DNA from: Mytilus trossulus
Lineage: Eukaryota
Length of the DNA stretch: 64,000 bases
Assembly (NCBI RefSeq): GCF_036588685.1
Contig: NC_086373.1
Location: forward strand, 16,926,001 to 16,990,000
Direction of reading: 5' to 3'
Shown here: in pieces, positions 24,397-62,207 of the stretch
Layout of the letters: every line of letters begins with the position of its first letter
How positions within the stretch are numbered: the stretch's first letter is position 1
Notes under the pieces: model-generated
The model's input: only the letters and a program-made list of their open reading frames with translations
What the model was told of the DNA's origin: nothing
Databases searched by the model: none
Program-made: the position numbers and the translations under genes

Positions 24397-27300
24397 CTAA
24401 TGTCGTAGAAATTTTTCAAAAAATATTTTTATATCTGTAGCTTCGGGTCTCAGATTTTGATCTTTAGCCCAGCATGTTTTTATTAGATTTTGCCAATTTT
24501 CATCTGGTTTATATTTCAATGATAACGATGGTCGCAGTCCTTCGTCCACTACCGCCCTTTCCAGGGAGGTATACAGTTGTTGTTGTATATGATCTGCTGC
24601 ATCGATGCCATACCACATCTCCCAAAGCATTATTCCGAGTGCATAAATATCTGCTCTTCTGTCATAAATTCCTTTCGGAACCAGTACTTCCGGTGCCATA
24701 TACACAGGTGAACCTAGAATTGATCCACCAATGTGATCCTCCCTCTTTGTCAACCCTACATCGGTAAGTTTGACTACGTCATGTCCATCTTTTTTCACCG
24801 TCTACAAGGACGATAGATAATGTAAAGTCAGTAAATGAATATTTGATTGCATTCACAGTTCGATAGAAGTGTATTTTAATGATTGTTAAGATATCTTTGT
24901 TCAAATTGAAATCTTAATATAATGGTTTCCTCTCTTTGTTTAATACATGTGTAATAAAATGTTTCCACTACTAGTATTCACTTTATTTAATTATATAAAT
25001 TTCGTTGAACATTACTTTATTTACTGGCTCATAAATATACTTCAAATCTTAGTACTACTTTTATGGTAAATCTTGATACCATTTGTCGATTGTTGTATCA
25101 GTCACAAAGGTTCAACTACTAGTACTTAGAGCAAAATATGTCCGTACGGTGACCTATAGCTGTTAATGTATGTGTCTTAGTCTTTTGAGGTGAGTTGTCT
25201 CACTAGAAATCATACCACATCTTCTTTTTTATATCCCATTTAGGAAGGCGACAAAATAAATGTTTTGGTCCAATAATTGAGAATGGGTAACCACTTACAT
25301 GAAACAACAAAATATTGCACAGAAAATAAAGGATTGTCCAACATGACCTTCACCAAAACTGGTGATAACAAAAATGAGCTGTTAGTACTATGTGTATTGT
25401 TTAAAATTGCTCTTATATGAGTATTGTCAGTATTTTAAAGATTTCAATAAATTTACCAAAATGTTTTCTAATTTCATATCACGATGAACCATTTTCTTCT
25501 TGTGGAGAAACTCTAGTCCTTCACATATCTGGGCAGCATATCTTGCAAGCTCCTCCATTTGTTCTATCTGTACAGAGTATATCTCCACTTTACCAGGGTT
25601 TTCGTATTCTGGGTTAATAAATTTATTTTTCAGTGTGTCATCGCAGTATTCCATTATCATGATCCAATGAACCATTCTCCTGGTTTTACCGCTCTGTTGT
25701 AATGTGCATCCATAATATTGTATAATATTCGGATGCTGCAGTTCCCTGAAATTAAAATGTGTACATCTGTAACATTTTGTTCTTTTGACAATCGCCGTTG
25801 CTCTCCTTCTTTACGATTTAATTATCATTCATATCGTTTTCTAACAAACGAAAAAATAAAAAAAGCAATATCATATATTCTAATTATTGAAGCGACGATT
25901 CAGTTTTCATAAAGATTCCTTTACGCGAATAGTTATACTTCCCCTATAATGCTTTAAATTTATACAAAACAGAACTGAAATTGACATCAAAACCATATTT
26001 AGATTAAAACAACATCAAACTAATATTGTTTTTATATTGGCTAAGCGACAATACCTTAATGTTCTATCTTCTAATAAAATGTCTGATATAACCTTCTCCG
26101 ACAATGGATCTTTGCAATATTTCAGTGCAACATTTTCATTCTGGTTAGGTAGTTTAAGTTGACCTTTGAACACGTCTGCAAACGCTCCACTTCCTAAAAG
26201 ATCATCTCTGTCCCATTCGACGTCACTTAATCTGTAGTCCATGTCCATGATGTAATAAACGTAAAAGAGATCCAGTTCACCTTGAATTGTGTGACCTGAG
26301 GAAATTAGTTGTGGATACATCTTTCTCATCTTGTCGTCTGTATCTCTAACACTGTGTGTGATTTTTTCAAGAAGCTGACTGTCTGCTTTGAGAAATTCTG
26401 GTATTTTCTTGGCAATTTCGTCCACACCTTTTACCAATTTTCCAAGATAGTTTGAAATTTTGTCTTGTAGTTCATTTCCTTGAAAAAGGGACTCGATAAA
26501 CATCACTGTTGCCTCTGCCATTTTCTTTGTATTGTTATCTTTCTTGTAACCTTTGAATATTTCCCTAAATTTTTTGTTACTTGCTATTACTGAACCGACA
26601 GCCCCTACCGCTCCTCCTAGTCCTCTGACGTCATCATCAGCACCATCTCGTTTTGCTTTTCTCCATAAGGCTTTTACTGGTGCTTGCTTCTTCATTGATT
26701 TGTGGAGGTCGTTTATTATCTTTTTATCCTGCTCTCCCAGAAGAGTACCTTTTTTAAAATGAATGAAAATTTGTTCATTAATATGTATTACTTATACGTT
26801 CATTCATTCATGAGAAAAGTTTTTTTTGAAAAATTAAATCAACTATCGTATCAAATTAGATAGTGTTTACTGAATTTGGAATCTCAACAATTTAAACTTT
26901 TTCTGTGGTTTATCTTTTAATAATTATACAAGCACGATTATTTTCGAACTCGTTCATTGTGTATATTCTATTACGTTTTCAAGAAAATAAGATTATTAAG
27001 GGGTATGTATAACAAAACTAAAAACACAAAATTTTCTTTGATTACTGAAAACCCAAAGACGATAGACATAGTTGAGAGATCTTAGATCTTTTACAGACGT
27101 GAAGTCCCAAATTTCTTATTTTTAATATCATCTGATGTGTATTTGTTCTACTCTAATAATTTGTTTGAAAATCTCGAAACCATCAAAAACAATCTCCGGC
27201 GTACAAGGTTATAAGCCTGGTATCTTTATCAATATATAAAACAAATCGTGACTTTAAAAGAGACTTTACCTTCTATTGTTATGATTTGGTCCTCTAGTAG

Positions 27301-30300
27301 TTCGCAATCTCGTTTGAATTTCTTGATCATTTTCTCTTTGAGTGAATGTATAATTCGTTGCTCCTTTTCCCATCTATTTAACTCCGCTGCAACTTTACTG
27401 GCAATTCTTTCAGCTGCTTCCTTTGCCAACTTCTTAGAATCATCAGGAGGTGGACATTCAACCTGGTTCCAGTCAGTTAATGTACTGAGCATGTTTCGTG
27501 ACCTTAACACGTCAGCTGTTGTTTTATGCAAATCGGTTATCTCATATTGTAGTCCTTTTCTCAGATCGTCAATCGTTTGTCTTGATTTAGCCTCTAAGGC
27601 GTCCATATTTCGTTTTATTCCGTCCATCTTTTTGGTCATTTCTTCTTTGTCTACAGCATCCAATGTCTTAGATACTTTAAGGGTGTAATTAGCTCTTTTA
27701 AGGATCTGCGACAACCACCTAAAATTTGGAATAAAATTCATGATAATCAAATAATAACATTCGGTCTCGTACAAGTTATGATAAAATAACTGGATGATGA
27801 CACAATGTACAAACTAATTGTAAACGTGTGCGTTTTCTCGTCAACCAATTCTAAAGCAAATGAATTTAATTATGCTAGTGTGCATATTTATGGAACTATC
27901 TTTATTTTTAAAGTAGTAACCTCTCCTTTTACTAATAGCGAATACGTTAAGATGTAGGATGTAAACCAATGAGAGAATATTACAGGGTTCCTTAGTTTGA
28001 GCAGTTGTTTCGCCACTTTCTCAGTTTGGCATGCTTAACTCCACCCAAAGTTACACAATATTTAAACTATAATTACCGATAATGTGAATTGAGTTGTTGA
28101 CGTAAACTGGCTGGAAACAATCGCTGCAGTCCATTCGAGATAAAATCTTCATGACCAGAGTTTATGGTTCCGAATTCTATTGCACGTTTGGCCTAAATAT
28201 AAGAAAGAACATTTTAATATCACCTACCAAAACGAGTTTAATGACTAGGCCTACATCTTCTACGAAATACATATACAAATGATATGTCTGATGTAACTTT
28301 TCGATCAAATTCATCCCAAATAAACCTTGGCCAAAGCTTTGCTGATGTGAAAACCGATTAAATGGTACTACTGATAATTGAAATAAGGTGAATAATAAGC
28401 TTCCAATAATGACGAATTGATGGACTAAATAAAACATACTGCCACTATATTGTGTCTTTAAAGTGAATCAGTAACTAATATTGGGTAGGGAAAATCTTCA
28501 TATCATATACAACAATCCCTTTTAAATTTCTATTTGAACTTTGCTATAAAAATTCCAAGAAATTTAATATTGAAAGCAAATTTCTTGTATTGATTTAAAA
28601 TCTTTGAGTAATTACCTCTGTTGTTGAAAAGTAAAATATTTGATCTTGTCGGAGTCCCTGAAATATTTGTTCCAATCGGTACACAATTCCCCGTTTTATT
28701 TCTTCTCTGTCTTTCGGAGGTACGACATCCCATTTATTACAAATAAATAAAGTGGATGAGGGACTGAAATCTTCCTCTGAAGAGTTGACTATATTTCTGA
28801 GAAAATCTTTCAACTAGAATATACAAGATATGAATAATTACAGAACATTTCAACAATTGGTTTGTGCAACCGTGTACAACAAATTGTGTCTACCGTTCCA
28901 AAAATGATTGTAATACGATAGATTTTTATTAAGTGTACAGAGTATTTTGATATCTTTTTCATATTTCATCTGCAAAACCGAAATGTGTGAAGTACAATCG
29001 ACAAATTTTGGGTTTTGCAAAACTATAAATCATCTTCAAATCTTCTTGTTGGCTGTGAACTGAATAGTCGGCTACAAAAGGCAACGACATGAAAAATTCG
29101 AAACATTTCAATTTGGAAGATAAACGGCCTAAGACGCCTGTCTATTGCTGAAGACGTTGTGTTTACCCTAAGAAATCTTGTTTTTTCGTGTATTTTTTTT
29201 TTTTTACTTTCTTTGTTGTGAATTTTCATTAAGTTATGTCCAACGTTTCCTTTTGTACATTAAAGAAAACCTGATAGGTATTATATATACACTTGATTGA
29301 CATTAATAAGTTCTCAGCCATTTCTTACCCGTCCTCTCTGAACACCGCCTGCATTAGCAGTATTCACAACATAAATGAAGCCACATGACTTTGAAAGGTA
29401 CTTTTTAAGTGATTTGTGCATCTGGTTGTCACCAAATCCAGGAGTATCTATAATCACCAGACCTTCCTGAAAAAAAAACCCAGTAAATTGGAAAATGTGT
29501 AACATTACGTAATACAATATAATACTGTGTACAATCAAAACAGTATAGGCCTGCAGTAAAGCAAAATTTTGTAAACGGCCATTTATCAAATATGACATGT
29601 GATCATCCATGATCGTTGTAATATACCCAAACGCTCTCTTTTCCCTTAAACAGCAACGCTGACATTGCAATTTAAATTTTGAAAAAGAAAAACAAATCGC
29701 TTTAATTGTAAATATTTAAACATTACATAGACTCTTAAAGGCCGGTTCAATTCAAATATTCTAATATCATGTAGTTATAAATCACATCTAGTAATTAAAT
29801 CACCGTGAAGTGGATAAAAAATGGTGCTCAATATTTTCCTATCTTATGAAATCAAAAGTCAACAAGAACGTTCATTTTTTTAGTTAAAATAAGCTGCAAC
29901 TGCAGCTATACTAATCTTACACTGAACTGTATAAAAGTCATCCAGTAATACTTATTTGTTAAATTAAAATTGGCAACCCAACGACTTAATTATACTACAG
30001 CCACAAAAACAAATATGACAGACAGCAGTCAATTAAAACTTTAGTAGTTGTATTCCTGCAGAAGTGGTATACCAAATAAGTAGACGAAAATTGAAGACAT
30101 TATATTTTTTTGAAACAGAGAAAGTTTAAATACGCCGCAGTTGACTTGGAAACGTTCACATTTTTTTCTTCATAATTCAGTGAAAAATGTCACTGATATG
30201 TAACGAGACAATACACTCCAGTGAATAAAAGATGGACGTCTATTTTGATAAACACGAAATTGTAACTGAAATAGTGTATATCATACCTCAATTACGTCAG

Positions 30301-33300
30301 TGGGCCAATATATTTCTATTTTTTCGTATGGATTGTCACCATAATCATCTTCGTATACTATTTCTCTCCTTAACCTTTCTTGTCCTTCCTTGGTACTTAG
30401 ATCTATCTCGGATCTCTGTCCGCCATTAGCCCCAAAGCAGATTGCCTTCTTTCGACCATCTTTGCTCTTTCGAATTTCGCAGACTGTTTGTGTGCATTTA
30501 ATACCACTAGTAGGAAGAATGTCAGCTTCAAGCAATAAGTTTATAAGACTACTTTTTCCTGATGTTGCCTCACCTAGAAAAAGATTATTTAGAGTTTATT
30601 GCCGTGCCAAAATGAGGCATCAGGTGTGTCCAAGTAATCACTTAATCACTTTTTTGCTTTAATAATCATTATACTCACATAATCATTTATTTTTTTTAAA
30701 AGCAAGATAATCAACAATACAGTCATAGATTATCAAATCATCGACAAAATCATGAAGTATTTGGTCTAGTAATAAAAAAAAAAAAAAAAATATCCATGAG
30801 AAGGCTCGAAAATATTTTGAAATTTTCAAGATAAAAAAATTAATTTAGCAACTGTTTCAATGTCTTAAGAAAAGAAAAAAAAACAGCACTTGGTGCAAAT
30901 GCGTTAATCATTATTCTCGTGTATTTTGAGAAATTAGAACTTCATCATAGGCCTAGTGTTGATCACACCTCAAAACAAAACATGTTAGCAAGGTCAAAAC
31001 CGACCGAAGCGTCTACGAAAACGATATCATTTTATATTATAATTGGTGTTTAACTTCATACGTAATTGAAGAAATATCACAAGAGTAACCAATGTATTGC
31101 ACTTATGAGATTTCACCACGATTTTCAATTTGAATGAAGCTTGATATCAGAAAAAATCTAAACAAAATAAGTCCTTAATGGCCATGATCACTAGTTTTAT
31201 TTTGTAAATAATATCGTGCTGAAAATTTGATCTGCAGTGATATATGGTAATGCTTTCTTGTACATATTGTAAGTTTATTTTTTGTTGAACAATGTGCCAT
31301 TGATGTTCGTTGTCTGTTTTCGTGAATTTACCGTATTATTTTATCGAAATGCATTGTACAGGTTTTTTTTCTAAAATGAAACCGTATTTATACCTGCGAC
31401 AAGAATGTTACATTCCGGTGAGGACAATTCAGATCGCTTGGAATGGGCATTCTTCTCGATGTCTGGAAAGATACTGTTCAAATCTTGTTGGAAGTTTGGA
31501 GGTAGTTCTCTATAAAAGTTCACGACTTTGTCATAAAGTGACATTAATTTCTCTCTATTTCCTCTGTGATATTGCAATGCTTCTTGTAAAACTGTTCCTC
31601 CCTGAAATTTAGAAGACAGTATAAAAATAAGAAAGTTATGTATGATGTCATACCATCTTTTTTTTAGAAAATAATTGGTAACACAGTCTTCTTCGTGTGA
31701 TTATTTTGTGCAATATTAATGGATAGTTGTTCATATACGTATTACATAATTTCCAATCTTTGAATAGGTATAAAGGTGGTAGACCTTGGTTCAGGGAGAT
31801 AACTCTTTGAATAAGTAATGCGTTTGTTAAAGTCAAGTTTCATCAAAGTATTTTTAGCATTTACATGAAACAGATTGGAAATAATCTATGTAACCTAGAC
31901 GTTTAGAATATATCTATGAAAATGGTTGACACAAACGTACTGATGATTTTAAGAGTTATTTCCCTTAACCAAGGCCTGCCTCCTTAAATAGCTAAATAAA
32001 ACCCGCTTGTACGTATTACAATTCATATACAACAGCAAAAACTTTACACAAACATTACAGAACATTCGTTGTTTAAAAATACAATAGAATTTGTGATGAT
32101 AATATCAGTTACATCGAAGAATCTGTACGCAGCAAGGAAACTAAAAAAACGTGTGCAAATGCACCTGTTACGTGATTGGTTGTTGATTGCCTAATGTCCA
32201 GTGGCAAATATTGCATGCGAATTCGGGACGACATATTTCATGCGTAGTGTCAATTCTTTATACAAAAAGCTTCCTTACTATTTGATGCAGCTAATGATGA
32301 TTGTCTGTCCGGATTAACTTTTTAGTGATACTAATACTCATCTGATGTAGAGTGTTTAACGAGACAATCACTAACCAGTATACCTGTTCTAAGTCATAAC
32401 AACTTCAGACAACCACAGTATAAATGTAACAAGTCCCTACAACTTAAGACAACCCCTAACCTGTATACATGTACCAAGTCACTACAACTTGGACAACCAC
32501 TGACCTATAAACATGTATGGTCACTACAACTCTAGACAACCACTAGCTTGTTAACATGTTCCAAGTCACTAAAACTTTAGATAAGCACTTACTGTATACA
32601 TATGCAAAGTCACTACATTTCTACAATCCCTGACTTGTATATATGTATCAAGTCACTACAAATTTGGACAAACAATGCCCTGTATACATGTACCAAATCA
32701 CTACCACTTTAGACAACCCCTGACTTGTATATATGTACTAAATTACTAAGACTTTGGACAAATTATGCCCTGTATACATGTACCAAGTCACTACCTCTTT
32801 TGACGACCACTGTCTTGCGAATATGTACCAAGTCACTAGAACTTTGGAAAAACAGTGCCCTGTATACATGTACCAAGTCACTAGAACTTAAGGCAACCAA
32901 TGACCCGTATACCCATGACCTGTCTCATTAGAACTTAAGATAACTATTGGCCAATATATTTGTACTATAGCAGTAGACAAATATTGACTGCATCAATATT
33001 ACAAATTTAGTTGAATTTAAGAGAACAATTGAAAAGAATGCCTCTACAAGATCAACTATGACATCACCCGTAAGTCATTGGAAGCACAGACAACTATGAC
33101 CAGTATACTTGGACCATATAAAAAAAATAAGGAGATGGGCATGAATGCAAATGAGACAACTATCCACCAAAGATCAAACGAAATGGACATCAGCAATGCA
33201 TTCTTATCGTCTATGTTATACTCACACTTTGCTTATATATAGAATGCATGAAAATGAAAATACGAATAGATAAAAAAAATAATTATAATAATAAATAGGC

Positions 33301-34425
33301 GCAAAGTCATTAAAAAGGTTTTAAAAAAATAAATATCATAGACTCAGTGTCATTAAAAAGTTAAAATAACGAAAATATCAGTTGCAAATAAGGAACATCA
33401 CGAAAATATGCAGTGCATACGAAATGTGTGCGTCTGCATTTCATATTTCATCTCTATTGAATTTATAAAGTAAAATTGGTAAACGTTAGGCTGAAATTTA
33501 GAAAAAATGGTTAAAGAAATCAATATCGGAATGCATGTAAGTGCGAAAAGTATACATGTTTAATCAAATGAAGCATAGCCAATTTAAAATTCACATGTGG
33601 GTACTTCAGAATTATTTTCAATGATCAGTAGAGTGTCAGTCATAAATTTAAATTTCTTAAAAGCGATGAACTAACACTTTTTTCGAACAATTAGTCTGGG
33701 ACTTTCCCCAAATAATTTGATCAGATACTTTATACAATGTAATATAGTAACGATGAAAAGGCGAAATAGTCTCAATGTTCCGAACGACTGATTCTTTTGA
33801 AAACGGTTAAAACATAAACTGGTATCGTGTTGCAGTGATTGTTATTTGTCGTGTCACTGAGTTATTCGCCTACATAGATTACACAAAAATAAAAAAATAC
33901 TGCATGCATAATTTATCATTTTAAATATATCACTGATTAATATTGATAAGATATTATACTAGTCTCCTCTATTTCTTTAGTATTGATATTCAACAAGATT
34001 CGATCAAGATTCAAATATAGACTAAAAGCAGACCAATTAATCAATAAAATCTTTAGTTTGCCAGTTTACAGAATATGTTCCTGTTTCAAATATTAAAGCA
34101 CTATCGTATTTTTCCTTTTGCATTTTCAAAACCAATTAAAAAGCCGGTGACAATTTTAAGCATACATTCATAAGACTATGGATTTATATACTGTATGCAT
34201 AAAAGATAAAGGTCGAAAACCGATAAAACAAAATCTTACCGTTTTTCTGTCTTTGGGTGCGACAGCTCCATTTTCCTTATAAAATTTTACTAGTTCTGAT
34301 ACGAAAATATCTTTATTTGCAGTTTTTGGTGCTTTAATTCCCCACTGTTTAAAAAGTTTCATCATGGACTGTATATCTTTCAGTTGTAAAATATCTTCTA
34401 CTTTGTTGATTTGTATTTCTGCCAT
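24397..34425 (-). CDS. Gene C: dynamin-like GTPase + helical stalk + protein kinase, 989 aa, intact
   Basis: Exons 34425-34240, 31601-31394, 30573-30287, 29466-29329, 28813-28616, 28192-28077, 27718-27270, 26748-26055, 25745-25457, 24801-24397, total 2970 nt. Same intron phases and motifs as B. Confidence 0.88.
32375..32945. repeat. ~44-bp minisatellite (degenerate) in C intron 1
   Basis: Unit approximately GACAACCACTGACCTGTATACATGTACCAAGTCACTACAACTT, about 13 copies. Confidence 0.85.
33698..33707 (+). promoter_or_regulatory. Canonical NF-kB consensus GGGACTTTCC in intron 1 of C
   Basis: Exact 10-mer, retained at 60862-60871 in the duplicate, about 0.7 kb from the C ATG. Function is untested. 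Confidence 0.35.
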
Positions 34426-40800: not shown

Positions 40801-43800
40801 AAATTTCATGTTGTTTCCTTCAGAAAATGCACTGTTTCAGAGTTTCCTCCCCTTAAAATGACAATTTAAAAAACATTGAAAGTTATTAATCTACGCTTGT
40901 AAAATTAATGATATGTATCTTGAATTTTTTTTCTTTTATATGAAATGCACATTAGTTTTCTGCAAGGCTCATCAAATTTTGCTATTTTGATTAAAAATCT
41001 GGATCTTAGAGTCTCTGTTATATACAATCCAAGATGGCGGAAGACAACCATTAAACTTCTTCTAAAGCGCTACCGACCGTGCGAGGGCTGTATAGCCAGC
41101 CAAGGTCGTTAAACACTTTTCAAAAGCTCATTTTAAGCAACATGTTGCTTAATAGCAAACAACAATAAATCTATCTGAAGGTTGATATAGACTGAATTGA
41201 TATTTTAACTTGAAAAGTGTATTTCATTAAAATACAACATAATACTTTTGAGAGAGATATCCAAAAACTACTATATACCATCTCACTTCTCTTTAAAATT
41301 TGACACGTAGCTTTGTATTAAAATTAAGCTTTGTATAAGTTATTTGATAAGAATTATCGTGTTGTTAAATCAAGGTTTGCAATTAATTGACCCTGTCATC
41401 TTGTATTTCGGAGAACTCCAATTCAAATTGGAAATTTTCAAATTCAAAAAATTGAGAATGAAAATGGGGAATGTGTCAAAGAGACAACAACCCGACCAAA
41501 TAAAAAAACAACAGCAGAAGGTCACCAACAGGTCTTCAATGTAGCGAGAAATTCCCGCACCCGGACACGTCCTTCAGTTGGCTCCTAAACAAATATATAC
41601 TAGTTCAATGATAATGAACGCCATACTAATTTCCAAATTGTACACAAGAAACTAAAATTAAAATAATACGAGACTTACAAAGGCCAGATGCTCCTGACTA
41701 GGGACAGGCGCAAAAATGCGGCGGGGTTAAATATGTTGTGAGATCTCAATTCTCCCCTATACCTCTAACCAATGTAGAAAAGTAAATGCATAACAATACG
41801 CACATTAAAATTCAGTTCAAGAGAAGTCTGACTAAGTACTTTACACACTGTTAATTATAGCAACCTTTTAAAACAGTTATTGTCGAATTTTAAAAATAGA
41901 TTTTGATTCTTTAAGTTCAATATCATAAATCTTAAGTAATGGGGAGAGGGGGTCTTCGGCAGCAACCATTTGATTTCGGGGGGGGGGGGGGGGGGGGGGC
42001 TATGGATTTTTTTTGGGAAAAAATGTTTGCTTCCAGTTTTTGGAGAACAAAATAATTTGTTTTTGACCCTGAGAAAAAAATTTGTTTGTTTCACCCTAAG
42101 CTGCCACCATATATGCTAAAATTGAAAGAAAAAAACTGTTTTCGACTTGTCGCCAAAAAAAATAGATTGTCCAGAAAAAAGTCCATAGCCCCCATTGAGA
42201 AAATCAAATGGTTGCTGCCTTAATTATTTCTGTGTAATTTATTCACAGCACAATTCATAAATCTTCATAGCTCGAATTATTTTATACACATCTGTATATT
42301 GTTGTATTATATCTTTAATTTAATACAATTCAATGATATGTGGAAAGCCTAATCTCGTACGACTTTATGCACACACCACAATACTAACGGTTTTTAATTC
42401 TTTGGTTCGGTAAAATATGTGCATTCAGGTAACGGTTTGATGATTACCTACCAGACAAGAGTATTGACATTAGGCATTTAAATTAATTAAAAAAAAATTA
42501 GCATTGACAGAACACTTTGTATGTCAACAATTGATTATATTTAAATGTTTTTATTCAAATCTTTGGTCCATATACCAACAAGGAACAATATTATCTCTAC
42601 TTTGAAGACCATCGTCCTATATTTTGATGTGACTACTAGCATGATGTGCAATAGTGGTCCTTTTTTTCTTTATATATATGTAATTGACTTTCAAGCTCAG
42701 TTGGCTCACATGATAGTATGATTAGCATAATACTATTGAATCCTCTCATGTGATATATACATGCACTTGGGGACTTGTTTTTTTTCTTTTCCTTTATGAG
42801 TTCTTGTTTTTATTCATACAACTTTACAATAACAGAAGTTTATACATGCTATCTATCAGTTCTTATTTTCATGTTCTCCTTTTTTTTAAATTTATATGAA
42901 CTAGTCAATAAAATAAACTTTTCAAATTTCGATATCTAAACTTTCACCTTGAAAATTAAAAGTGTGAACTTATTCTCAAAAATATGAATACTAAATTAAC
43001 ATATTCGATATTTGGTACCAAATTATGAAATCTTTCTCAGGTGTAATAATACCTTTGAATAATACCTGTACGGTATTTTCTCACTTTCCGACTTGGTCGA
43101 ATTTTTTTACCATGTTTTGCAAATGAAATTTGTAATTAAAAGTTTTTCCAATTTATGATAATATATTAGAAATTCTAGTACATAGTATATGTCGTCACTT
43201 TTGTTGGCCTCTATATTTACATCTTCCGCTGCTTTTACAATAGGAACGTGTATTCTTATGGTTCTCGTTGCCCAAAATAGACAAACGTTATGTCGACTCT
43301 CTCAACGACGAAAAAAATGTGTCCTGTACACTGAAAGCTGTTTTATTCGAACATTTCACACTTTTGTCATATATGGGAAATGGAAATTAAGAATTAAAAC
43401 TTTGTAAACCCAACAAACTTAGAAAGCAGGAGCACTTAAAACACACGTTTCTCTTTTTTTATAAGAGCCCCGAATCTGAAACGAAAAAAAAATTGATTTT
43501 AGTTCAAAACATCTTGTACATCGCATATATAGCCTCCTTGTTCAAATAATAGGGGATTGGATTTTCTGTCAAGTTGGAGCTGATCATTATACTAGCAAAT
43601 CCTAATGCGTTTCATATGTTGTTTTAACTTACTTGGGGTTTTGTCATTCAAGAATGGTATACTTGATATTTCTTTTAAATGTGATTTCTCAATACTTTCA
43701 GATAAGTCGAGAAATGAAAGATTATAAAAGAGATGACAATAACAAAAGAGGAAAACTTCATGACTTATTAACCCAAACCAAAACAAAGTTCTCAATAGAA

Positions 43801-46800
43801 GATGCCAATTCTTCCGAAGGAATTTCTGTAATAGAGAAGGCTCTCAAAACAGAAGGATTTGTAAAAAATCTTGGTGAAGAGTTCTGCATCAGACAGGAAA
43901 CCATTAAGAAAGGGGAGTGTTGTATCGTTGTTGCAGGTGTGAAGGCATTGTAGAATATTTTTAAAACATAGTTAAGTCAAAGATTTTATTGATATAAAAT
44001 CAAAAATCAAAATCAGAACCAATCGTTGACAAATGAATATGTTCGTTTCCTTCAGTGTTTTTTTTAAAACTGTGGTCAATGAGATTTATGTTAAACTTAA
44101 ATATCTTAAACCCGCAGTCATAATTCAATTCCTTTTAGTTTCATAGACCACATTCAAATCAGCAAAACAAAGCTCAATTACTTAAAAAAAGATATAAAGG
44201 TTTATTGCAAACATTCACATCAAAATCTACTTGTATTTGTTTTTCATTTATTTGTTTTGTACATAAATCCGACCGTCAGTTCTCTCTATCGTCTAAATTG
44301 ATTAACATTTATCATTTCGAGGACTTTTATATTTTGTGTTTTGCTCATGTTCGAAGGCGAATGGGGACGTCTATTTGCTTATTTCATTTAGTCTCAAGTG
44401 GAGAGTTGTCTTATTGGCAATCATACCACATCTTCTATTTTTAAATGAAATACCAAAGATTCTTTTTATTATTTTGCAGGCGAAACGGCAGCTGGAAAAA
44501 CTCTATTCTTAAACCTGATATTGGGTGAAGACATAATGACGTCAAAACATTGGTCTTGTAGTGTTATCACCCGTTTGTCATATGGCAAGACAAAACATGC
44601 TAGAATTGTCTATCATGACAAAAACAGACCAGATGATATATATGATAATATTGATAATGGCAAACTCCATAAACTAGTGTACGAAGAAAACCTAGACAAG
44701 AGGGAAAACCTTTCTGATATAAAGGAAGTCCAGATATATCTTCCAGCTAAACTATTAGAGGTAAAACTTTTTAACTATTAATTGTTTGACGAAGCAATAT
44801 ACAAGTTAAATTTGTTTTTTTTTTCTAAACAATTTTGTTAATTATTTATTACGATCGGATGATTTTTTTTTTTATAAAAGTTAAAGCCACAGTAAAGCAC
44901 AGAAGGGTAACGTCTTCAAAATAAATCAACGAACAGAAGAAAAGGCAAAAAAACAAAAGCTGCTCATTTCTTACGCCTTGCGTCCACATTGAATAAGAAA
45001 AAAAGGCAAATAAAAGATGATATGTGGAGTATTCATAATTGACAAGCAAAATAAAACGAAACAAAGATATCTTAACGAAAAATACATGGTTTTCGACAAA
45101 ACGAAAACGTTCATTCGATAGGTCAAGCTCTTAATTGTCGTGAGTAAGGAAGTTAAACAAAGAAGTACCATCGATACAAAATTCCTTAATTTAATTTTAA
45201 TCGGAAAGACATCCACTGGTTCGGGGAAGGCCCATCACTCTTACGTTTCCAGAGAAAAAAACTACCTTCCGTGAAAGCAACTTTTAACATTCTTATTATT
45301 TATTCAGATATGTAAATTATCATTCAGTAATCCTTGTTATCGTATGGGTCTAATTTAAAATTATTTTGCCTTTATTTAGAGTGGTATAGTTCTGATAGAT
45401 ACACCTGGTATAGGAAAAAACGATGATATCGACGTTGTGGTAGAAAAATTTGTTGACGAAAATCAAGTGACTGGATTTATTTACATGATTAAATCTGATA
45501 ACCCCGGAGGTGTGGATGAAGACAGTGTACTTATTTATTTTGTTATTTTCATCATGGCTTATTTATTACATCGCATATTATTTCACATGAACAAAACGAA
45601 AAATCAGATAACAACGTTAATTAAATGATATGAGCAAAAAACAGCCCCAATACGGATAAATCATCCTGTGCAATAGAGATGACGTTCTACTGTCGATATA
45701 AATCAAGAGTTAATATTGCTTTTCGAACAGGGCCAATACTGAAAAAATAGAAAAGCCCGGAGAGAAGCCGTATTGGCCTATGGGCTAATATGGGAAATTC
45801 ACTTCCGGTTATATTTTTCTTACGCCTTATTTAACCTTTAATCATTAAATGAAAGTGTTATAGACTTACTGTATCGGTATTGGCCCTATTAATGATTATC
45901 GGTCAGCTGTGTTTGCCCTCGACTCTTTGTTCAATATTATAGTGTTATTAACTGGCTGTTTCTGTATTGGCACTGGTATAGATTCAAGGTTTGCTGTATT
46001 GGCCTCGAGACCCGCAGAAAAACCTGCATTTATTTATTTATTTATTTATTTTTTTAATTTAATTTTAATATTTTACACAATATACTTTCCAGTATTCAAA
46101 TAATTGATTTGTACACTATTTTGTAATGGTTTTCACTGAAAACGTAGCATTGAGGTGTATTTTCCGGGATTTGCCGAGTATCACCGGAACGCCATGTGAT
46201 AAAGTTACGGAAAGGCATGTGATAACAATCGAGCATGTGATAAACTTTTCATATCAGCCCGCTAAGCACCAATTCGAAAAATATGGAAAATACTTTAATT
46301 TAATGCTATTATCATACGGTAAAAATCATATGTTATTTAGTCTTAGTATAGGATAACACGTTTTAAATGATTATAAGAGAATTAAAAACCGGAAGTAAAC
46401 GTCTCGTATTAGCCCATGGGCCAATACAGCTTTCTTGCCGCTATTTTCTGAAATGGCCCTGTTTTTTCCGTTTCAAAACTTTAAGACGTTACAAAACATT
46501 GCACATCATTTAACCAGTTTATTTTATGACTTTAATTAAAAAAATATTATACAAATGTTTTTATGCATAACGATACTTCCAAAGTTAAGTAATGGCGTAA
46601 GAAAATTGAAAACCGGAAGTGAATGTTCTGTATTAGCTAATACGGCTTTTTTCCCGCTTTTTTCTGTATTGGCCCTGGTTTTTTTCGTATTGGCCCTGTT
46701 CAATTATATTAAATCTTGATTTATATCGACAGTGGAACGTTTTTGGTATTGCACATGCTGATTAGGGCTTATTTGCTCATATCATTTAATAAATCTATCT

Positions 46801-49786
46801 ACAATCTATAACAGGGCCAGTACAGAAACAGCAAGTTAATATCACTATAATATTTACCATATAAACGTAAATGGGCAACCATTATTAATACTATACCTAA
46901 CTTAAAATCCTGTGTTACGAAAATATAAACAAACAGCAAAAGTAAGATGAACAAAATTTGCTTAAATTAGAAACAGGATCGACTGCTGAACAATGAACTT
47001 TATATGTTATTCAGGTCTCAGACAGGGTATATACTGTGACATTCCCGGCTTAGAGTTTATATCCCCTGAGCCGTGAATATCACAGTATATACCCTTTCTG
47101 AAACATGAATTACACATATATTACGGATAACCCCTGACTTAATGTTATTTCCAGTGCAGGTATTTGTTGACAACACATATATATTGAAAATCCCAACCTG
47201 ATATGTTCGGCATACGTGAAGGATTTTCTAATTTGCTGTGAACATAATTTTATCGTGTATGTAGTAATTTATAATAACACTTTCAACATTAAATTTAAGT
47301 ATTAAAAGTGTAATTTTGCATGATTTTGTTTGAAAAAATGTATTATTGACTGAAGGACGTCATTATTTTCTCTCTGTGAGCCTCTGACAGTCTGATAGAA
47401 CTGACTACGTCACATAGTAACCGGTGTTATGATGACGTTTTTAAGGTTCCAATTGGGGATAGAAACGTCGTATATACCCCGGCAGTTTCCTGAATATATA
47501 CTGACATCTCTGTGCTGTTATCCAATCACAAACCTCGACACATTTGTAATCCGTCATATAAATTGTTTTTACCTAACTCTTAACTCTAATTCATAGTTTC
47601 CTATATTTTGTTGTATATGCCATTTAGTTTTGGTATTAACAATTTTTTTATGTGGAACTTTTTGTCTCAAATAAGATTTTGTGAATTGTTTTCTTCCGAA
47701 ACACATATCTTGCTGACTGAAATATGTGCCATTTGTTTATATTGATAAACGCCATTCTTGTACCAACTACTCATGTACTAGTCTCTAACTTATCCAGTAT
47801 CACCTACTAAGTAATACTGACCATCAAAGTACCTGTCGTTAGTAATAACATGTAAAATAAACGTACCAAATGCTTAATTGCTTAATGTTAATAATGTAAT
47901 TGGTGATTACAAGAGTTCTGGTACTTTCAGTTAGTTAAATTGATGAAGATAATTCTACAAAAGGAAAAGACAAAAGGAGAAAAGGGCACATTTAGATTTG
48001 ATCCTAGCTGTGCAATGTTCATTTGTAATCGTTGGGATAATGTATGTGAAAAAGATAAAGTATATAAATACATAGTTGACAGGCTTCATAAAATTTGGCC
48101 TAAGTTCGACGAAGAGAAAGTAAAGACATTTTCATCATACAAAGCCAAAAACGAAATGGAGACAGATCAAGATTATATAACATCAGACTTTCAAGATGTA
48201 TTAAATATACTGAGAAATATTTACAGCCAAGCTTTGAATGAACGAGTGAAGGTCACTTACAAGTAAGTTAATTACAAATTGGTGTCAAATATGGGAAATA
48301 ACAAAGATATTAAACGACAACCCTCTTCGTCATTAGTTAAAATTTCAAAACCTAAATTATGAGATCGATTTTTCACCAAGCGAAGGTTTGACAGTAAAAT
48401 GAGCTGTGCCTTTATAGTTTGATTTCAAAACACATACTTCTTTCTACTTGTTGAAGGAGGGACAATAATGCAATAACAAGACTCAATAGTATTGAGTTTC
48501 TATTTCTGATTTTGATTTATAGTTCATGACTTGCAGTGAGTTTAGCGTTGTTGTTTTTTTCCATGTTGAATGCCTCATTGTGCTTTATAGATGAAAAACA
48601 GCAACAACAAAAAACCGCTGTTCCTTTGCTTTTTATGCTGTTATTTTGTGTCGAAGATGGATACTCGATATCCTTTGTTATTTTGTTGGTAACATGCTGA
48701 AATATTAACGTTTATATTAGGTGGATGAAAACTCTTTTACTGCGATCAGTACATCACATGAAAACAATGGTTAAACAACTCAACTGTTCGGATGATGAAA
48801 TGATAAACAAAATGAAAGAAGCGAATAAAAATTTGGAAAAGCTAAACAATGAATCAGTTGACGTCATAACATCTTTAAGAGATATGATTAACACCAAGTC
48901 TCATCAAATTTGCGGTTTATTTCGAGAGAACCTGAAGCTACCTGTGGTGCGGATGGCTATAACTCAGTGGATAGAAGAAGAACTTCCAAGCGAGTTCATT
49001 CTATATCAGTATGGAATGCCTAAAGCAGTCAAGAAAGAATGGATGGATCTTAAAACGGAAATTGATGCTTTAATCATTGAAAGGATCGGTATTGAACTGG
49101 GCAAATGGGAAGAAATATACGGTACCATTGATATTCTTGAAACATTGGTTATTAACGAAATTCAGAAAAAGGTTTTGGGACTAACCAATGAGGTGACAAA
49201 AGTAGAGACAGAATTGCATTCATCAACAGCATCCAGAGATTTGACCGCATCAATTCCAAAACCCGCGCATCGAAGAGATAGCAGACGTGAAACTGTTTGT
49301 GCTACCTATTCTGGCAAAATGCAACTAGAGGATAATCAGTACTATCTCAGTGCCCTTGCAAGAAATAAAATGTTCCAGCCGATGAAGAAAGTTATACGAA
49401 TATTTCCGGGTGCTAATAAGTGGACGGTTTACGCGAGTAACAAATGCGCATATGCAAAGGGTCGATCTGAAAAACTTCTGAAAACATTTACCGAGCCATG
49501 CCAAAATGAGGACGATCCGCTGAAAATTGTCATTGACTTTTTTATGGAAGGAGCTAAGGAAACATTAGATAAATCCATTCTTGAGATTCAAAATTTGATC
49601 AAATCAAACCAGGACATTTTTAGTCACGTGTCAACGTGTAAACGTGATGTTGCCAAACATCTTCGAGTATATGAGGAAATGATGAAAGAACTAGAAGTTC
49701 TCAAACGTCTTCTAGCAGATTATGGTGAGGGATATATATTTATTGAAGATTTTAAACCAAATGAGTTACAGATTATTGATCAATAA
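34861..49786 (+). CDS. Gene D, open 5' part: N-terminal domain + dynamin-like GTPase + stalk (756 aa up to an insertion-created stop)
   Basis: Exons 34861-35070, 43702-43936, 44480-44760, 45380-45526 (weak donor T|gtactt), 47931-48262 and 48721-49786 (TAA). G1 GETAAGKT, G3 DTPG, G4 NRWD. Intron positions are shared with B/C. Confidence 0.75.
35233..37621 (+). mobile_element. Helentron/HINE-like non-autonomous elements, two tandem units (35233-36473 and ~36503-37621)
   Basis: 5' AGCTCACCT with a nearby inverted copy AGTGAGCT, a (CGTC/CGT)n microsatellite, long internal repeats, 3' AGGTGAGC plus hairpin AGGCTCTTTAGAGCCT, and T-rich flanks. Absent from the duplicate near 62.36-62.40 kb. Confidence 0.75.
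37992..38547. mobile_element. MITE with TTAA flanks (Kolobok-like GG..CC termini)
   Basis: TTAA|GGAGGCTCGTGGGTACAAA ... TTTATACCCAGGAGCCCCC|TTAA; absent from the duplicate at ~62750. Confidence 0.7.
39130..39539 (+). ncRNA. Two tandem degenerate minimal type I hammerhead ribozyme motifs (retrozyme / Penelope pLTR-like, ~361-nt monomer)
   Basis: Consensus GCGTCA-CTGATGA-GTC(loop)GAC-GAAA-CGCGCG-TC-TGGCGT. The copy at ~39132-39180 has a 5-nt insertion in the core. The copy at ~39493-39537 has CTTATGA. Confidence 0.7.
39540..40302 (-). mobile_element. 5'-truncated non-LTR retrotransposon (LINE 3' end)
   Basis: ORF end LAIETGRY...ERLCKLC...ENEIHFMMNCPLY (CCHC knuckle), a 3'UTR with ~24-bp tandem repeats, a (TCTTA)n tail at 39540-39560, and an apparent TSD CGTATA at 39534-39539 and 40303-40308. 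Confidence 0.8.
41958..42220. mobile_element. MITE with ~20-bp TIRs and an internal poly-G run
   Basis: GGCAGCAACCATTTGATTT ... AAATCAAATGGTTGCTGCC. Confidence 0.65.
45620..46790. mobile_element. Foldback/MITE with long imperfect TIRs
   Basis: ATTAAATGATATGAGCAAA...CTGTCGATATAAATCAAGA at the left; the reverse complements TCTTGATTTATATCGACAG...TTTGCTCATATCATTTAAT at the right. Confidence 0.7.
47003..47560. mobile_element. Element with a ~115-bp terminal hairpin plus a body bounded by short inverted repeats
   Basis: CAGACAGGGTATATACTGTGACATTCCCGGCT ... AGCCGTGAATATCACAGTATATACCCTTTCTG, followed by TATATTACGGAT ... ATCCGTCATATA. Confidence 0.55.
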
Positions 49787-51143
49787 AGGCAAAAGTAGTA
49801 TACCACTGTTCAAAATTCATTAATCCATGGACAAAAAACAAAAACGGGGTAACAAACCAAAACCGAGGGAAACGCATTAAATATAAGAGGAGAACAACGA
49901 CACAACACCGAAACACAACACACACAGAAAAGGACCAAGCATCAGACAAAACACCACGAGAATAACAAATATAACATGAAAACCAAATACATGAATTTGG
50001 GATAGACAAGTACCGTGCCACGTCTTATCTCAATATCTCAAAAATAAGAGAAAACACAAACGACTCAACGTTAAAATGCAACACACACAGAAACGAACAA
50101 TAATATAACAATGGCCATCTTCCTGACTTGGTACAGGACACTTTTAAAGGGGAATAAAAGTGGTGGGTTGAACCTGGTTTTGTGGCATGCCAAACCTCGC
50201 ACTTTAATGGCAAAGTTAAATATAACATTGAAATGACAACATAATATTACAGGACTACAATACAAATAAATTGGAGATCATATTAGACAAAGCAAAACAT
50301 GATTAATAGATAACAAAAAGCATCAGGTTTAAATTCAATACGCCAAAAACGCGCCTTGTCCACACAAGACTCACCAATGACACCCAGATATAAAAGATCG
50401 AAAGTGAAAAAAGTACAAAGTTGTACAGCACTGAAGATCAAAAGTTGAAAAGGTTTCGCCAAATACGGCATTGTTTTTATGCCCGGGATAAGAACATTCT
50501 TATTATATAGAACAATTCACGCTATTGCAAACAGTACATTTTATCAAATGAATATGAAAGAGATATACATAAAGAAACTGAGGTATTAACAAATTACAGA
50601 AAACTAAACCCGAATACATAACGCCCAGATATAAAAGATCGAAAGTGAAAAAGGTACAAAGTTGTACAGCACTGAAGATCAAAAGTTGAAAAGGTTTTGC
50701 CAAATACGGCATTGTTTTTATGCACGGGATAAGAACATCCTTATTATATAGAACACTTAATGCTATTGCAAACAGTAAATTTTAACAATTGAATATGAAA
50801 GAGATATACATAATGAAACTGAAGTATTAACTAATTACAGAAAACTAAACCCGAATACATAATGCTAAGTTTATCACAAAATAGACACACCCGAATCAGT
50901 CCAGGCGTCAACGTAATTAAAAAAAATTAAAAATGTGACGTCACATACGATGGCGAAAAGGCACAAATGTTATGCCACATTTGAACTTATGAAATTTAGA
51001 AACATCATGACGTCACATATGAAAAACTATCATTCAAAAGTGAGATAGAATTAGGATTGATTTAAGATTGTATTAGAACTATACTGATAATCCATTCCAA
51101 CAAAATGCATATTGCAATACATATTAATAGCAATTAACTGTAA
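49784..51143. mobile_element. ~1.36-kb composite insertion inside D exon 6
   Basis: Begins with the repeat end AATAAAGGCAA(C/A)AGTAGTATACC, also seen at ~8486, ~22057 and, reversed, ~4050. Contains a ~239-bp tandem duplication (50384-50861) and a decayed hammerhead-like motif on the minus strand (~50340-50385). The coding frame resumes after it. Confidence 0.75.
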
Positions 51144-51145
51144 TA

Positions 51146-52794
51146 TATATATGTGTCCAGTTTGATATGAATCCAAATTCAAACGTAAATAATCGTACAA
51201 AATTTAATATTATTAATAATAACGCAACAGGAAGGTCAACGACCCCTTTCAAAATATCAGAATTCTTGATGAACATGTCAAGTTCACAAACTAGCACGAT
51301 CCAACAATGCCCCAGGGGTTTGTGGACAGCACACCAGAAAGGACTACTGAAACATGAAAATAGCGAAGAAAAGGTTACCATTAAAATATACCTTCCTTCA
51401 TGCAACACAGACAGATGCTATTCCAAAATTGCAAAGCTGAGGTTAGTTCACTATTTTTATTTAACTTAATGTTAATAGTAAAAAAATATCAAGCGCGTGT
51501 TTAAGTATCTTAAAACTAAAATGTGTTTTTCAATCGTTTTTGACGTGTTTTGTCATTTGAATTTACCATGTGATAAGGGACTATCCAATTGAATTTTCCT
51601 CGGAGTTCAGTATTTTTGTGAATTTACCTTTTAAAGCAAAAGTAAAATTTTGTGCTTCTTTTTTTATTTCAAATTTTATCATTTTTGAAAATAAAGTTCT
51701 ATAGATAAACTCATATCTGTTAAATTTATTTGATGGAACTATCCAATGTCGCATCATAACAACGATATTTTAATTGTATTTCAGATTATTAGAACATAGC
51801 AATGTTGCAGAATTCTTGGGAATAAAAAATTCAGAATCGTATTTTCCTGCAATTGTATACAACAAACCTATGAGGATACTTCGACATCAATACGAGAAAC
51901 ATTCTGGACATTTATATATCTCCAACTTACTCCAGGAGGTTACAATGGGGTTACAATACCTTCATAGACATGGGATGGTCCATATGGAACTTAATATGAA
52001 TACTGTTATGGTAGATATATTTTTCAGTTATTTTAAAATAAAATGGATAAAATTTGAAATAAAAAATATCTTATAAATTTTTTGTTAGACAGTACATTAA
52101 ATTATTTTTGTCGTTACTTTAAGATTAACAGAAGTCTCAATAGCACACTATATGTTTCTGTAGTCTAAAGATTGTGGAATCGGATAGTCGAATCGCATTT
52201 TTGCGCATGAAAATAGTAGAACAAAAGTCGTACTTATTTAAAAAAAATTTAGAGAAATCTAGAAAGTCATGCTTTGTTACAAATATAATATATTCTATTA
52301 ATTAATTTATTAGCACAAAATGGGCGAAAATAAAATAATTTTTACTTTTGTGTCTTGTTTGTAGTTGGATTCAGCGGGAAACATTCGTCTAACTGGTTTT
52401 TATCTTCCTCGTAAAGCAGATCTTCCAGGAAACCAAGAGCAACATATAAGTGGAGATTTTGTCTATTAGGCACCGGAAGTTTTGAGAGGAGATCTGTACA
52501 CCGCAAGTGCAGATGTCTATGCGTTTGGCCGTCTGATGTTTGACATGATGTCGAAAAATATCGCTAGATCTGTTTATTAAAAGAATAAATCCTAGAGAAA
52601 TGATAAGTCTCGAAACTGATGTGCCTGATGATGCAATTGACATTATACTTCGGTGCTTAGAAATATCAGAGGAATCGAGACCAACACTTTTAAATTTACA
52701 AGAACAAGTAAAGGTCCTCAAAACTGACCAACATGCCAAAGAACCCAAGCAAAATGAAGTAACTTACCGGGGACATAAACATGGAAGGGACTAG
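51146..52794 (+). pseudogene. Gene D, 3' part: disrupted pseudokinase domain
   Basis: Exon remainder ~51146-51441 (VTIK lysine motif), exon 51785-52010 (LQYLHRHGMVHMELNMNTVM) and exon 52365-52794 (IRLTGFY...DFVY*APEVL...DVYAFG). In-frame TAG at 52467-52469, and a frameshift before the C-terminal ...LRCLEISEESRPT segment. Confidence 0.8.
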
Positions 52795-61997: not shown

Positions 61998-62207
61998 ATG
62001 GCGGGTACATTAGAAGGAAGCAGTGAACAGCCTATAGATATATCCTCCAAAAAAATAAAAGAAATTGATGACTTTTCTGATGCATTTGGCATTGCAGAAA
62101 ATTTAGACGTCGACCTTGGTGGGCTTGACGATTTGGAAGATATAAAAGAACGACTGATGATGGAATTCCAGAAATGTCAGCCTGGATTTATAAATTATAA
62201 AGAAAAG
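61998..62207 (+). CDS. Gene F: exon 1 of a duplicate of gene D; the rest is expected right of the window
   Basis: MAGTLEGSSEQPIDISSKKIKEIDD...YKEK|gtcggt, near-identical to D exon 1, in the same head-to-head position relative to E. Confidence 0.75.

What the first reader, a model, noticed from the sequence alone, without database searches (positions are those of the whole stretch)
24397..52794. Head-to-head pair: dynamin-like GTPase-kinase plus dynamin-like GTPase-pseudokinase (candidate two-component defence system)
Seen: C (minus strand, all kinase catalytic motifs present) and D (plus strand, same domain order and 7 shared intron positions, but very diverged and catalytically degenerate) start 435 bp apart. 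The arrangement recurs as E/F. Known: bacterial dynamin-like proteins often act as co-encoded hetero-pairs (Campylobacter DLP1/DLP2, mycobacterial IniA/IniC). Kinase/pseudokinase partners (RIPK3/MLKL) and head-to-head plant NLR pairs are immune designs. DSTYK has a comparable long N-terminus plus kinase but is normally single-copy. Inference: the two genes are co-regulated and form a hetero-oligomer in which GTP-dependent assembly couples an active kinase to a pseudokinase regulator, decoy or effector. I do not know of a description of this pairing.
Basis: partly seen in the sequence, partly recalled or inferred. Interest (0 to 1): 0.88.

Follow-up and report, generated by a model that had tools for sequence, protein, structure and literature searches.

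The report
Dynamin-like GTPase kinase/pseudokinase gene cluster
This mussel locus is where two oppositely oriented arrays of an undescribed animal gene family meet: bacterial-type dynamin GTPases fused to a kinase on one strand and to an ancient dead kinase on the other. In each of the two head-to-head "pairs", however, one partner is a broken gene.

Summary
C (minus strand, 24397-34425) is an intact 10-exon gene for a 989-aa protein: a BDLP/mitofusin-type dynamin-like GTPase, a helical trunk and an active-looking kinase. D (plus strand, 34861-52794) starts 435 bp away, has the same domain order and shares all 7 of its intron positions and phases with C.

D's clade is a real, old pseudokinase clade. 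All 35 representatives, including amphioxus, have HMEL-type motifs instead of HRD, no DFG and no glycine loop, but keep intact GTPase motifs.

This is not a working pair. D carries a 1,434-bp repeat insertion in exon 6 with an immediate stop, a nonsense codon and a 26-bp deletion. E/F is a segmental duplicate: E is a 4-exon relic with two frameshifts, and F is intact (Mytilus trossulus LOC134717044).

The genome holds 7 C-like and 3 D-like genes, arranged as two divergent tandem arrays rather than 1:1 pairs.

The two clades also look adjacent in Tegillarca and probably Mercenaria, judged from locus tags only. The scan's earlier notes on this family are all on this same window.

The parts
24397..34425 (-). 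Gene C: intact dynamin-like GTPase-kinase, 989 aa. Ten exons: 34240-34425, 31394-31601, 30287-30573, 29329-29466, 28616-28813, 28077-28192, 27270-27718, 26055-26748, 25457-25745, 24397-24801 (stop included).
   Evidence: Pfam Dynamin_N and Pkinase. GT-AG model with an open frame. 33% identity over 949 aa to the Argonauta protein P0094. Exon 1 is homologous to the N-terminus of Pinctada P0129.
34426..34860 (.). 435-bp spacer between the divergent start codons of C and D (candidate bidirectional promoter). It is duplicated between E and F at 61565-61997.
   Evidence: Promoter activity was not tested.
34861..52794 (+). Gene D: disabled dynamin-like GTPase-pseudokinase. Exons: 34861-35070, 43702-43936, 44480-44760, 45380-45526, 47931-48262, 48721-49781 plus 51216-51441 (one exon split by an insertion), 51785-52010, 52365-52794.
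   Evidence: Exon-by-exon alignment to the exact F model shows all splice sites kept. The 755 codons before the insertion are open.
49782..51215 (+). 1,434-bp A-rich repeated element inserted in D exon 6. It places a TAA stop, inside an AATAAA, directly after ...LQIIDQ. It contains a 241-bp internal tandem duplication at 50377-50858.
   Evidence: F is continuous across this point. Copies at about 95% identity lie elsewhere in the 250-kb region.
52467..52469 (+). TAG nonsense codon in D's last exon. It replaces the Leu of the YLAPE motif seen in F.
52552..52553 (+). Site of a 26-bp deletion in D's last exon relative to F, which shifts the frame.
56053..61564 (-). E: relic of a C-like gene with exons 1-4 only (about 61379-61564, 58889-59096, 57085-57373, 56053-56189). 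Exon 3 has a 2-bp insertion and exon 4 a 1-bp deletion. Exons 5-10 are absent.
61998..62207 (+). Exon 1 of F, the intact D-like gene. Its other 7 exons lie beyond the window, up to genome position C1:16999950. The product is exactly P0079 (LOC134717044, 1058 aa).
5569..17070 (-). Gene B, a C-like tandem paralogue. Its last exons and 3' flank (4547-7914) are 95% identical to C's 23381-26751, while upstream exons are 73-82% identical at protein level.
1280..1492 (-). Exon 2 of gene A, the next C-like tandem paralogue. The rest of A lies upstream of the window.

Best explanation
The span is the meeting point of two divergently transcribed tandem arrays of one old animal gene family. Each member encodes a complete bacterial-dynamin/mitofusin-type module (large GTPase, neck and trunk helices) fused to a C-terminal protein-kinase fold.

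The minus-strand array has six genes on this chromosome, C being the last, and there is one more copy on contig C7. This array belongs to the catalytically competent clade. The plus-strand array (D, F, G) belongs to a sister clade whose kinase fold has been a pseudokinase since before bivalves diversified, while its GTPase motifs stayed intact.

A block holding the C 5' end, the spacer and a D-like gene was duplicated. One gene in each copy then decayed: D by a repeat insertion, a nonsense codon and a 26-bp deletion; E by truncation and two frameshifts. Today C and F are the intact genes. The head-to-head geometry is a legacy of family birth-and-death, not a working 1:1 pair.

Inferred mechanism, not shown: GTP-driven self-assembly of the dynamin-like module on a membrane brings the kinase domains together for trans-activation. 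Pseudokinase-clade members may co-assemble in trans as regulators or scaffolds.
For: **Domains and fold**
- Pfam finds the domains on exons and on full-length relatives.
- AF2 models: F has pLDDT 80.9 and the Pinctada C-like protein 74.2.
- The top Foldseek hit for both is BDLP 2j69 over about 735 columns (E 2e-17 and 7e-15). For the F model this is followed by IniA, Campylobacter DLP1/2, SynDLP and mitofusins among the dynamin-type hits. The C-terminus matches BRAF/JAK2/FGFR/RET kinases.

**Clades**
- Motif table.
- The tree shows one change of the HRD label, with 100% support.

**Cluster map**
- Six C-like genes lie on the minus strand, then D, E, F and G.

**State of each gene**
- C is intact.
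- F is exact, with 8 exons.
- D lesions.
- E lesions.
- D has about twice as many lineage-specific replacements as F: 30 vs 11, 27 vs 15 and 44 vs 26 against three outgroups.

**Range of the family**
- The family is present in many bivalves, cephalopods, a gastropod and amphioxus, and Atlas clusters are commonest in Mollusca and Cnidaria.
Against: - D-versus-F dN/dS is 0.28 before and 0.33 after the insertion, and 755 codons upstream of it are still open. D was therefore constrained until recently and could still make a kinase-less GTPase.
- The two clades are linked in this genome, in Tegillarca and probably in Mercenaria. This could reflect selection for co-regulation rather than inertia.
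- No RNA, population or interaction data could be obtained.
- The tree used FastTree with midpoint rooting, and long branches (amphioxus) may be misplaced.
Confidence: 0.7

Rival explanations
1. One reading: C-like and D-like genes are an obligate, co-regulated two-component (defence) system. They are driven from a shared bidirectional promoter and act as a GTP-dependent kinase/pseudokinase hetero-oligomer.
For: - The pseudokinase clade is conserved, with its GTPase intact.
- Both start codons lie 435 bp apart, and the spacer is kept at 94% in the duplicate.
- The clades are adjacent by locus tag in Tegillarca and have near-consecutive gene IDs in Mercenaria.
- The family shows tandem expansion and gene decay, as many immune families do.
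Against: - In both junctions one partner is dead.
- There are 7 C-like but only 3 D-like genes.
- Most copies, including the C7 copy and G, have no head-to-head partner.
- There is no evidence of any kind for induction by infection or for binding.
Confidence: 0.12
2. D is still functional as a truncated, kinase-less dynamin-like GTPase of about 756 aa. Its transcript would end at the stop/AATAAA supplied by the insertion, and only the downstream pseudokinase exons are decaying.
For: - 755 open codons, intact G1/G3/G4 motifs and all splice sites kept.
- dN/dS is 0.28 upstream of the insertion.
- The stop overlaps an AATAAA at the junction.
- Shorter Dynamin_N-only relatives are annotated in other bivalves (P0088, P0092, P0095, P0097).
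Against: - dN/dS is no lower upstream (0.28) than downstream (0.33) of the insertion.
- D accumulates about twice as many replacements as F.
- There is no transcript evidence.
Confidence: 0.15
3. The D lesions are specific to this haplotype or are assembly errors, and D is an intact GTPase-pseudokinase in most Mytilus trossulus genomes.
For: - The overall dN/dS is low and the splice sites are intact.
- Repeat insertions are often polymorphic in mussels (general knowledge).
Against: - Three independent lesions of different kinds lie in two exons.
- The database held a protein identical to F but none identical to D.
Confidence: 0.1

Closest known systems
Bacterial dynamin-like proteins (Nostoc BDLP, M. 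smegmatis IniA, Campylobacter DLP1/DLP2, SynDLP) and mitofusins
   Same: The G domain with G1-G4 motifs and the neck and trunk helical bundles are shared. BDLP 2j69 is the top structural match over about 735 aligned columns for both clades. Atlas neighbours of the N-terminal 690 aa are bacterial Dynamin_N proteins and mitofusin-2.
   Different: - These are animal, intron-rich genes.
- A protein-kinase fold is fused to the C-terminus.
- No transmembrane segment is evident.
- The trunk-tip loop is a short Gly/Ala/Val-rich segment in the C-like clade and a Ser-rich RRxS/T loop in the D-like clade.
- Bacterial pairs are co-oriented in operons, whereas these genes are divergent and not paired 1:1.
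DSTYK (dusty kinase)
   Same: The length is similar (about 930-1000 aa) and the kinase sits at the C-terminus after a long N-terminal region. NCBI names the Argonauta C-clade protein P0094 'DSTYK-like'. Chordate DSTYK clusters are the next-nearest Atlas neighbours after the Dynamin_N+Pkinase clusters (score 0.94).
   Different: DSTYK clusters carry no Pfam Dynamin_N hit, and molluscs have a separate DSTYK-like cluster. No alignment of the N-terminal regions could be made here, so homology beyond the kinase domain is a lead and not a result. A review treats DSTYK as a divergent kinase of poorly known function (PMC10492769).
ROCO proteins (LRRK1/2, DAPK1)
   Same: A GTPase and a kinase sit in one polypeptide, with GTPase-controlled kinase signalling as the presumed logic (established knowledge).
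   Different: The GTPase here is a large dynamin-superfamily domain with a BDLP trunk, not a Ras-like Roc-COR module. There are no LRR, ankyrin or WD40 repeats.
Kinase/pseudokinase partners (RIPK3/MLKL, RAF/KSR) and head-to-head NLR pairs
   Same: An active and a dead paralogous kinase fold coexist. One junction is head-to-head with a short spacer.
   Different: There is no evidence of binding or of co-expression. One partner is broken in each junction, and copy numbers are unequal. The kinase fold's nearest solved structures are generic TK/TKL kinases, not RIPK or MLKL.

Membership tests
Dynamin superfamily, BDLP/mitofusin class | Large GTPase domain with G1 (GxxxxGKS/T), G2 Thr, G3 (DxxG) and G4 (N/TKxD) motifs | tested here: met
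   C has GEATSGKS, DTPG and NKWD. D has GETAAGKT, DTPG and NRWD. The motifs are conserved in 44 relatives. Dynamin_N scores above the Pfam cut-off in six full-length relatives and on the C P-loop exon (42.3 bits against a cut-off of 27).
Dynamin superfamily, BDLP/mitofusin class | Helical neck and trunk bundles formed by segments before and after the G domain | tested here: met
   AF2 models match BDLP 2j69 over 739 and 734 columns (E 2e-17 and 7e-15). The F model also matches IniA, DLP1/2, SynDLP and MFN1/2.
Dynamin superfamily, BDLP/mitofusin class | Membrane-binding paddle or transmembrane segment at the trunk tip | tested here: inconclusive
   The tip loop is modelled with low confidence (F residues 571-607, Pinctada 562-583). 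It is a Gly/Ala/Val-rich segment flanked by Lys in the C-like clade and polar with RRxS/T in the D-like clade.
Dynamin superfamily, BDLP/mitofusin class | GTP-dependent self-assembly and membrane remodelling | not testable with these tools
   This needs biochemistry.
Active eukaryotic protein kinase (gene C) | Gly-rich loop, beta3 Lys, alphaC Glu, HRD Asp with catalytic Asn, DFG Asp, APE | tested here: met
   C has GSGAFA, VALK, HRDMKLEN and APE, with DVG instead of DFG. The Asp is kept, and the Phe-to-Val change is shared by all 9 clade members, including cephalopods. Pkinase is found on the exons. Catalytic activity itself was not tested.
Pseudokinase (gene D and its clade) | Kinase fold that lacks at least one of the catalytic Lys, HRD Asp or DFG Asp | tested here: met
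   HMEL-type motifs replace HRD (SFEL in amphioxus; HPEV and HAVL in two unnamed sequences), TG[GA]C.PR replaces DFG in most, and RGLWT replaces the Gly loop, across 35 representatives. Pkinase is still above the cut-off. The fold is confirmed in the F model.
DSTYK | Orthology to the dusty kinase over the kinase domain and the N-terminal region | tested here: inconclusive
   The only evidence is a source name on P0094 and Atlas feature similarity of 0.94.
Co-encoded dynamin-like hetero-pair / head-to-head two-component system | Two intact partner genes adjacent in a fixed orientation | tested here: not met
   C is intact and D disabled; E is a relic and F intact. The other 6 C-like genes and G lack a head-to-head partner.
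Co-encoded dynamin-like hetero-pair / head-to-head two-component system | The arrangement is conserved in other genomes | tested here: inconclusive
Co-encoded dynamin-like hetero-pair / head-to-head two-component system | Co-expression and physical interaction of the partners | not testable with these tools

The most novel reading that the evidence does not exclude
Animals possess an undescribed signalling module made of two ancient sister families of BDLP-type dynamin GTPases. One is fused to an active kinase and the other to a pseudokinase, and they have stayed genomically linked in bivalves. They would co-assemble in a GTP-dependent way on membranes. The conserved RRxS/T loop at the pseudokinase clade's trunk tip would serve as a phospho-switch. 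Vertebrate DSTYK would be a descendant that lost a recognisable GTPase. In mussels the module would be expanded for stress or immune signalling.
Probability: 0.15. Interest if true: 0.8.

Novelty: new variant of a known kind. Interest (0 to 1): 0.5.

Why it matters
A complete bacterial-dynamin/mitofusin-type module fused to a kinase is an unstudied way of coupling GTP-driven membrane assembly to phosphorylation. It is comparable in logic to LRRK2 but built from different parts.

Database proteins with this architecture exist in molluscs, amphioxus and apparently cnidarians, all unnamed. None of the six library searches found a paper describing them.

The conserved pseudokinase sister clade offers a natural kinase/pseudokinase contrast.

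If DSTYK, a human disease gene with an unexplained N-terminus, proves to descend from this family, these genes would point to its function.

For this particular locus the lesson is more modest. The apparent two-gene system is the edge of a birth-and-death gene cluster, with one dead partner in each pair.

Tried and rejected

**Searches of limited use**
- The profile search with the mixed alignment A2 was noisy, because MAFFT misplaced exon fragments. It returned only 9 C-clade proteins.
- The IQ-TREE run did not finish, so FastTree was used.
- Six library searches and one in-paper search found no description of this family. PMC4277547 is not held.

**Ideas rejected**
- RIPK3/MLKL-type kinship is rejected: the nearest solved kinases are generic TK/TKL kinases.
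- E/F as independent evidence of pairing is rejected, because it is a segmental duplicate.

**Handling of spliced models**
- The spliced C model was never sent to a search tool. Exons were searched by reference.
- Joined models were built only inside local scripts from window.fa.
Full report
**Setting**

The window is AT-rich (about 32% GC) and intron-rich. It is C1:16926001-16990000 of a 1.30-Gb assembly. Contig C1 has the same length (113,486,924 bp) as the contig that carries Mytilus trossulus LOC134717044 (P0079). The genome encodes P0079 exactly, so the organism is M. trossulus.

**Gene C**

- Pfam finds Dynamin_N and Pkinase on minus-strand reading frames.
- Reading the splice sites gives ten GT-AG exons and an open 989-aa frame from the ATG at 34425 to the stop at 24397.
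- GTPase motifs: G1 GEATSGKS, G3 DTPG, G4 NKWD.
- Kinase motifs: GSGAFA, VALK, HRDMKLEN, DVG, APE. The DVG variant of DFG is shared by every member of its clade, down to cephalopods.
- C is 33% identical over 949 residues to an Argonauta protein that NCBI calls DSTYK-like.
- Its exon 1 peptide is homologous to the N-terminus of the Pinctada relative.
- I sent C to search tools only exon by exon, by reference. The joined model was built and used only in local scripts.

**Gene D and its clade**

- D's 361-aa exon found 47 representatives among 1.84 billion proteins. They include full-length proteins of about 1,050-1,075 aa from Argopecten, Pinctada, Sinanodonta, Saccostrea and Mya.
- A profile search added Pecten, Mizuhopecten, Ylistrum, Tegillarca, Potamilus, Mercenaria, Mytilus and two amphioxus proteins.
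- The six full-length members scanned all carry Dynamin_N and Pkinase above Pfam's thresholds.
- In all 35 representatives the GTPase motifs are kept, but the kinase motifs are gone:
  - HMEL-type motifs replace HRD (SFEL in amphioxus, HPEV and HAVL in two unnamed sequences);
  - TG[GA]C.PR replaces DFG in most;
  - RGLWT replaces the glycine loop.
The pseudokinase is an old, conserved state.
- A tree of 44 proteins separates the 9 HRD-bearing proteins from the rest on one fully supported branch. This used FastTree with a midpoint root, and long branches were flagged.

**Shared introns**

An exact 8-exon model of the paralogue F reproduces P0079 with intron phases 0,1,0,0,2,2,0. All seven introns coincide in position and phase with introns of C, which has two more. 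D keeps AG and GT at each of these sites. The 435-bp spacing between the C and D start codons is correct.

**Fold**

| Model | Mean pLDDT | Best Foldseek hit | Aligned columns | E-value |
|---|---|---|---|---|
| F | 80.9 | BDLP 2j69 | 739 | 2e-17 |
| Pinctada C-clade protein | 74.2 | BDLP 2j69 | 734 | 7e-15 |

For the F model, the further dynamin-type hits are IniA, the Campylobacter DLP1/DLP2 pair, SynDLP and mitofusins. The C-terminus of each model superposes on BRAF, JAK2, FGFR or RET kinase domains. The architecture is therefore a whole BDLP-type module fused to a kinase or pseudokinase.

**What the "pair" is**

Whole-genome searches find only three D-like genes, all in this cluster. They find seven C-like genes: six in tandem on the minus strand here and one on contig C7. 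Mapping a 250-kb region gives the order c1, c2, c3, A, B, C (all minus strand), then D (plus), E (minus), F (plus) and G (plus). Only C and E face a D-like gene.

Lesions in D relative to F:
- A 1,434-bp A-rich repeated element sits in exon 6. F is continuous across this point, and copies at about 95% identity lie nearby. The element supplies a TAA, inside an AATAAA, directly after ...LQIIDQ.
- A TAG codon replaces the Leu of YLAPE at 52467.
- A 26-bp deletion lies at 52552/52553.

E has only exons 1-4, with a 2-bp insertion and a 1-bp deletion. Because 33386-35227 matches 60550-62361 at 94%, E/F is a segmental duplicate of the C-5'/D block and not an independent recurrence. After the duplication each copy lost one gene, so C and F are the survivors.

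Evidence on how recently D decayed:
- D-versus-F dN/dS is 0.28 upstream and 0.33 downstream of the insertion.
- The 755 upstream codons are open.
- D has about twice as many lineage-specific replacements as F.

Together these indicate that the decay is recent. A truncated kinase-less product cannot be excluded.

**Linkage elsewhere**

- In Tegillarca, the C-like fragment KUTeg_020047 (P0010) and the D-like KUTeg_020048 (P0070) carry consecutive locus tags on one contig.
- In Mercenaria, the C-like LOC123529922 (P0126) and the D-like LOC123529918 (P0087) lie on one chromosome with near-consecutive gene IDs.

This suggests long-standing linkage of the two clades. It says nothing about orientation.

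**Function**

What is shown is the architecture, the motif states, the clade structure and the state of each gene. The rest is inferred. By analogy with BDLPs and mitofusins, GTP-dependent assembly on membranes would cluster the kinase domains, and the pseudokinase clade may join such assemblies.

Two features fit a division of labour. At the trunk tip, where BDLP has its paddle:
- the C-like clade has a short Gly/Ala/Val-rich segment flanked by lysines;
- most D-like proteins, including amphioxus, have a Ser-rich disordered loop with an RRxS/T motif that looks like a phospho-acceptor site.

A defence role is only suggested by the tandem expansion and turnover.

**Comparison and novelty**

- The nearest known kinds are BDLP/mitofusin-class dynamins for the N-terminal 740 residues and generic TK/TKL kinases for the C-terminus.
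- The overall logic recalls ROCO proteins, but the GTPase is of a different kind.
- DSTYK is a lead. Atlas neighbours of P0094 are first Dynamin_N+Pkinase clusters (commonest in Mollusca, then Cnidaria) and then chordate DSTYK clusters without Dynamin_N. The N-terminal 690 residues alone resemble bacterial dynamins and mitofusin-2. I could not align a DSTYK sequence.
- Six library searches and one in-paper search found no paper describing a dynamin-kinase fusion family. A review calls DSTYK a divergent kinase of little-known function (PMC10492769).

**Verdict**

The pseudokinase idea is right and applies to the whole clade. The specific two-component reading of C/D and E/F is not supported here, because each junction has a dead partner and the family is not organised in pairs. 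The family itself is an undescribed variant of GTPase-kinase fusion and is worth following up.

Noticed in passing
window 4547-7914 vs 23381-26751: Gene B's last exons and 3' flank are 95% identical to C's, while B's upstream exons are only 73-82% identical at protein level. This indicates gene conversion or a partial duplication with a breakpoint near the stalk/kinase boundary.
   Followed up: partly
proteins of alignments A3 and A4 (trunk-tip loop; C residues about 565-600; D exon 6, window about 49250-49330): At the position of the BDLP paddle, most D-like proteins (amphioxus included) have a Ser-rich disordered loop with an RRxS/T motif. C-like proteins have a Gly/Ala/Val-rich segment flanked by lysines. 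The first is a possible phospho-switch and the second a possible membrane paddle.
   Followed up: partly
window 49782-51215 (internal repeat 50377-50858): The element inserted in D is a multi-copy, A-rich, apparently non-coding repeat with a 241-bp internal tandem duplication. Several copies or fragments at 94-95% identity lie within the surrounding 250 kb. Its class was not determined.
   Followed up: partly
window 35340-37646; 32362-32911; 59708-60182: Long tandem repeat arrays lie in D intron 1 (units of roughly 400-750 bp, 83-91% alike) and in intron 1 of C and of E (short-period arrays).
   Followed up: no
protein P0085 (Mytilus galloprovincialis LOC143066878): The M. galloprovincialis relative of D/F has a degenerate P-loop (GETAAGKY) and G3 motif (YTPG). 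This lineage may be losing GTPase competence as well.
   Followed up: no
G000 C2:8166390-8166761, C2:25582794-25583165, C2:38105130-38105507, C6:43603377-43603955, C3:38696341-38696607: Further matches to the C-clade kinase region lie outside the cluster (E about 1e-18 to 1e-28). They may include the true DSTYK orthologue or more distant family members.
   Followed up: no
window 2078-3595 vs 18350-19862; 541-1594 vs 16101-17173: Intergenic and exon-2 segments recur between the A/B and B/C units at 82-90% identity. This marks the tandem duplication unit of the C-like array, about 16-19 kb.
   Followed up: no
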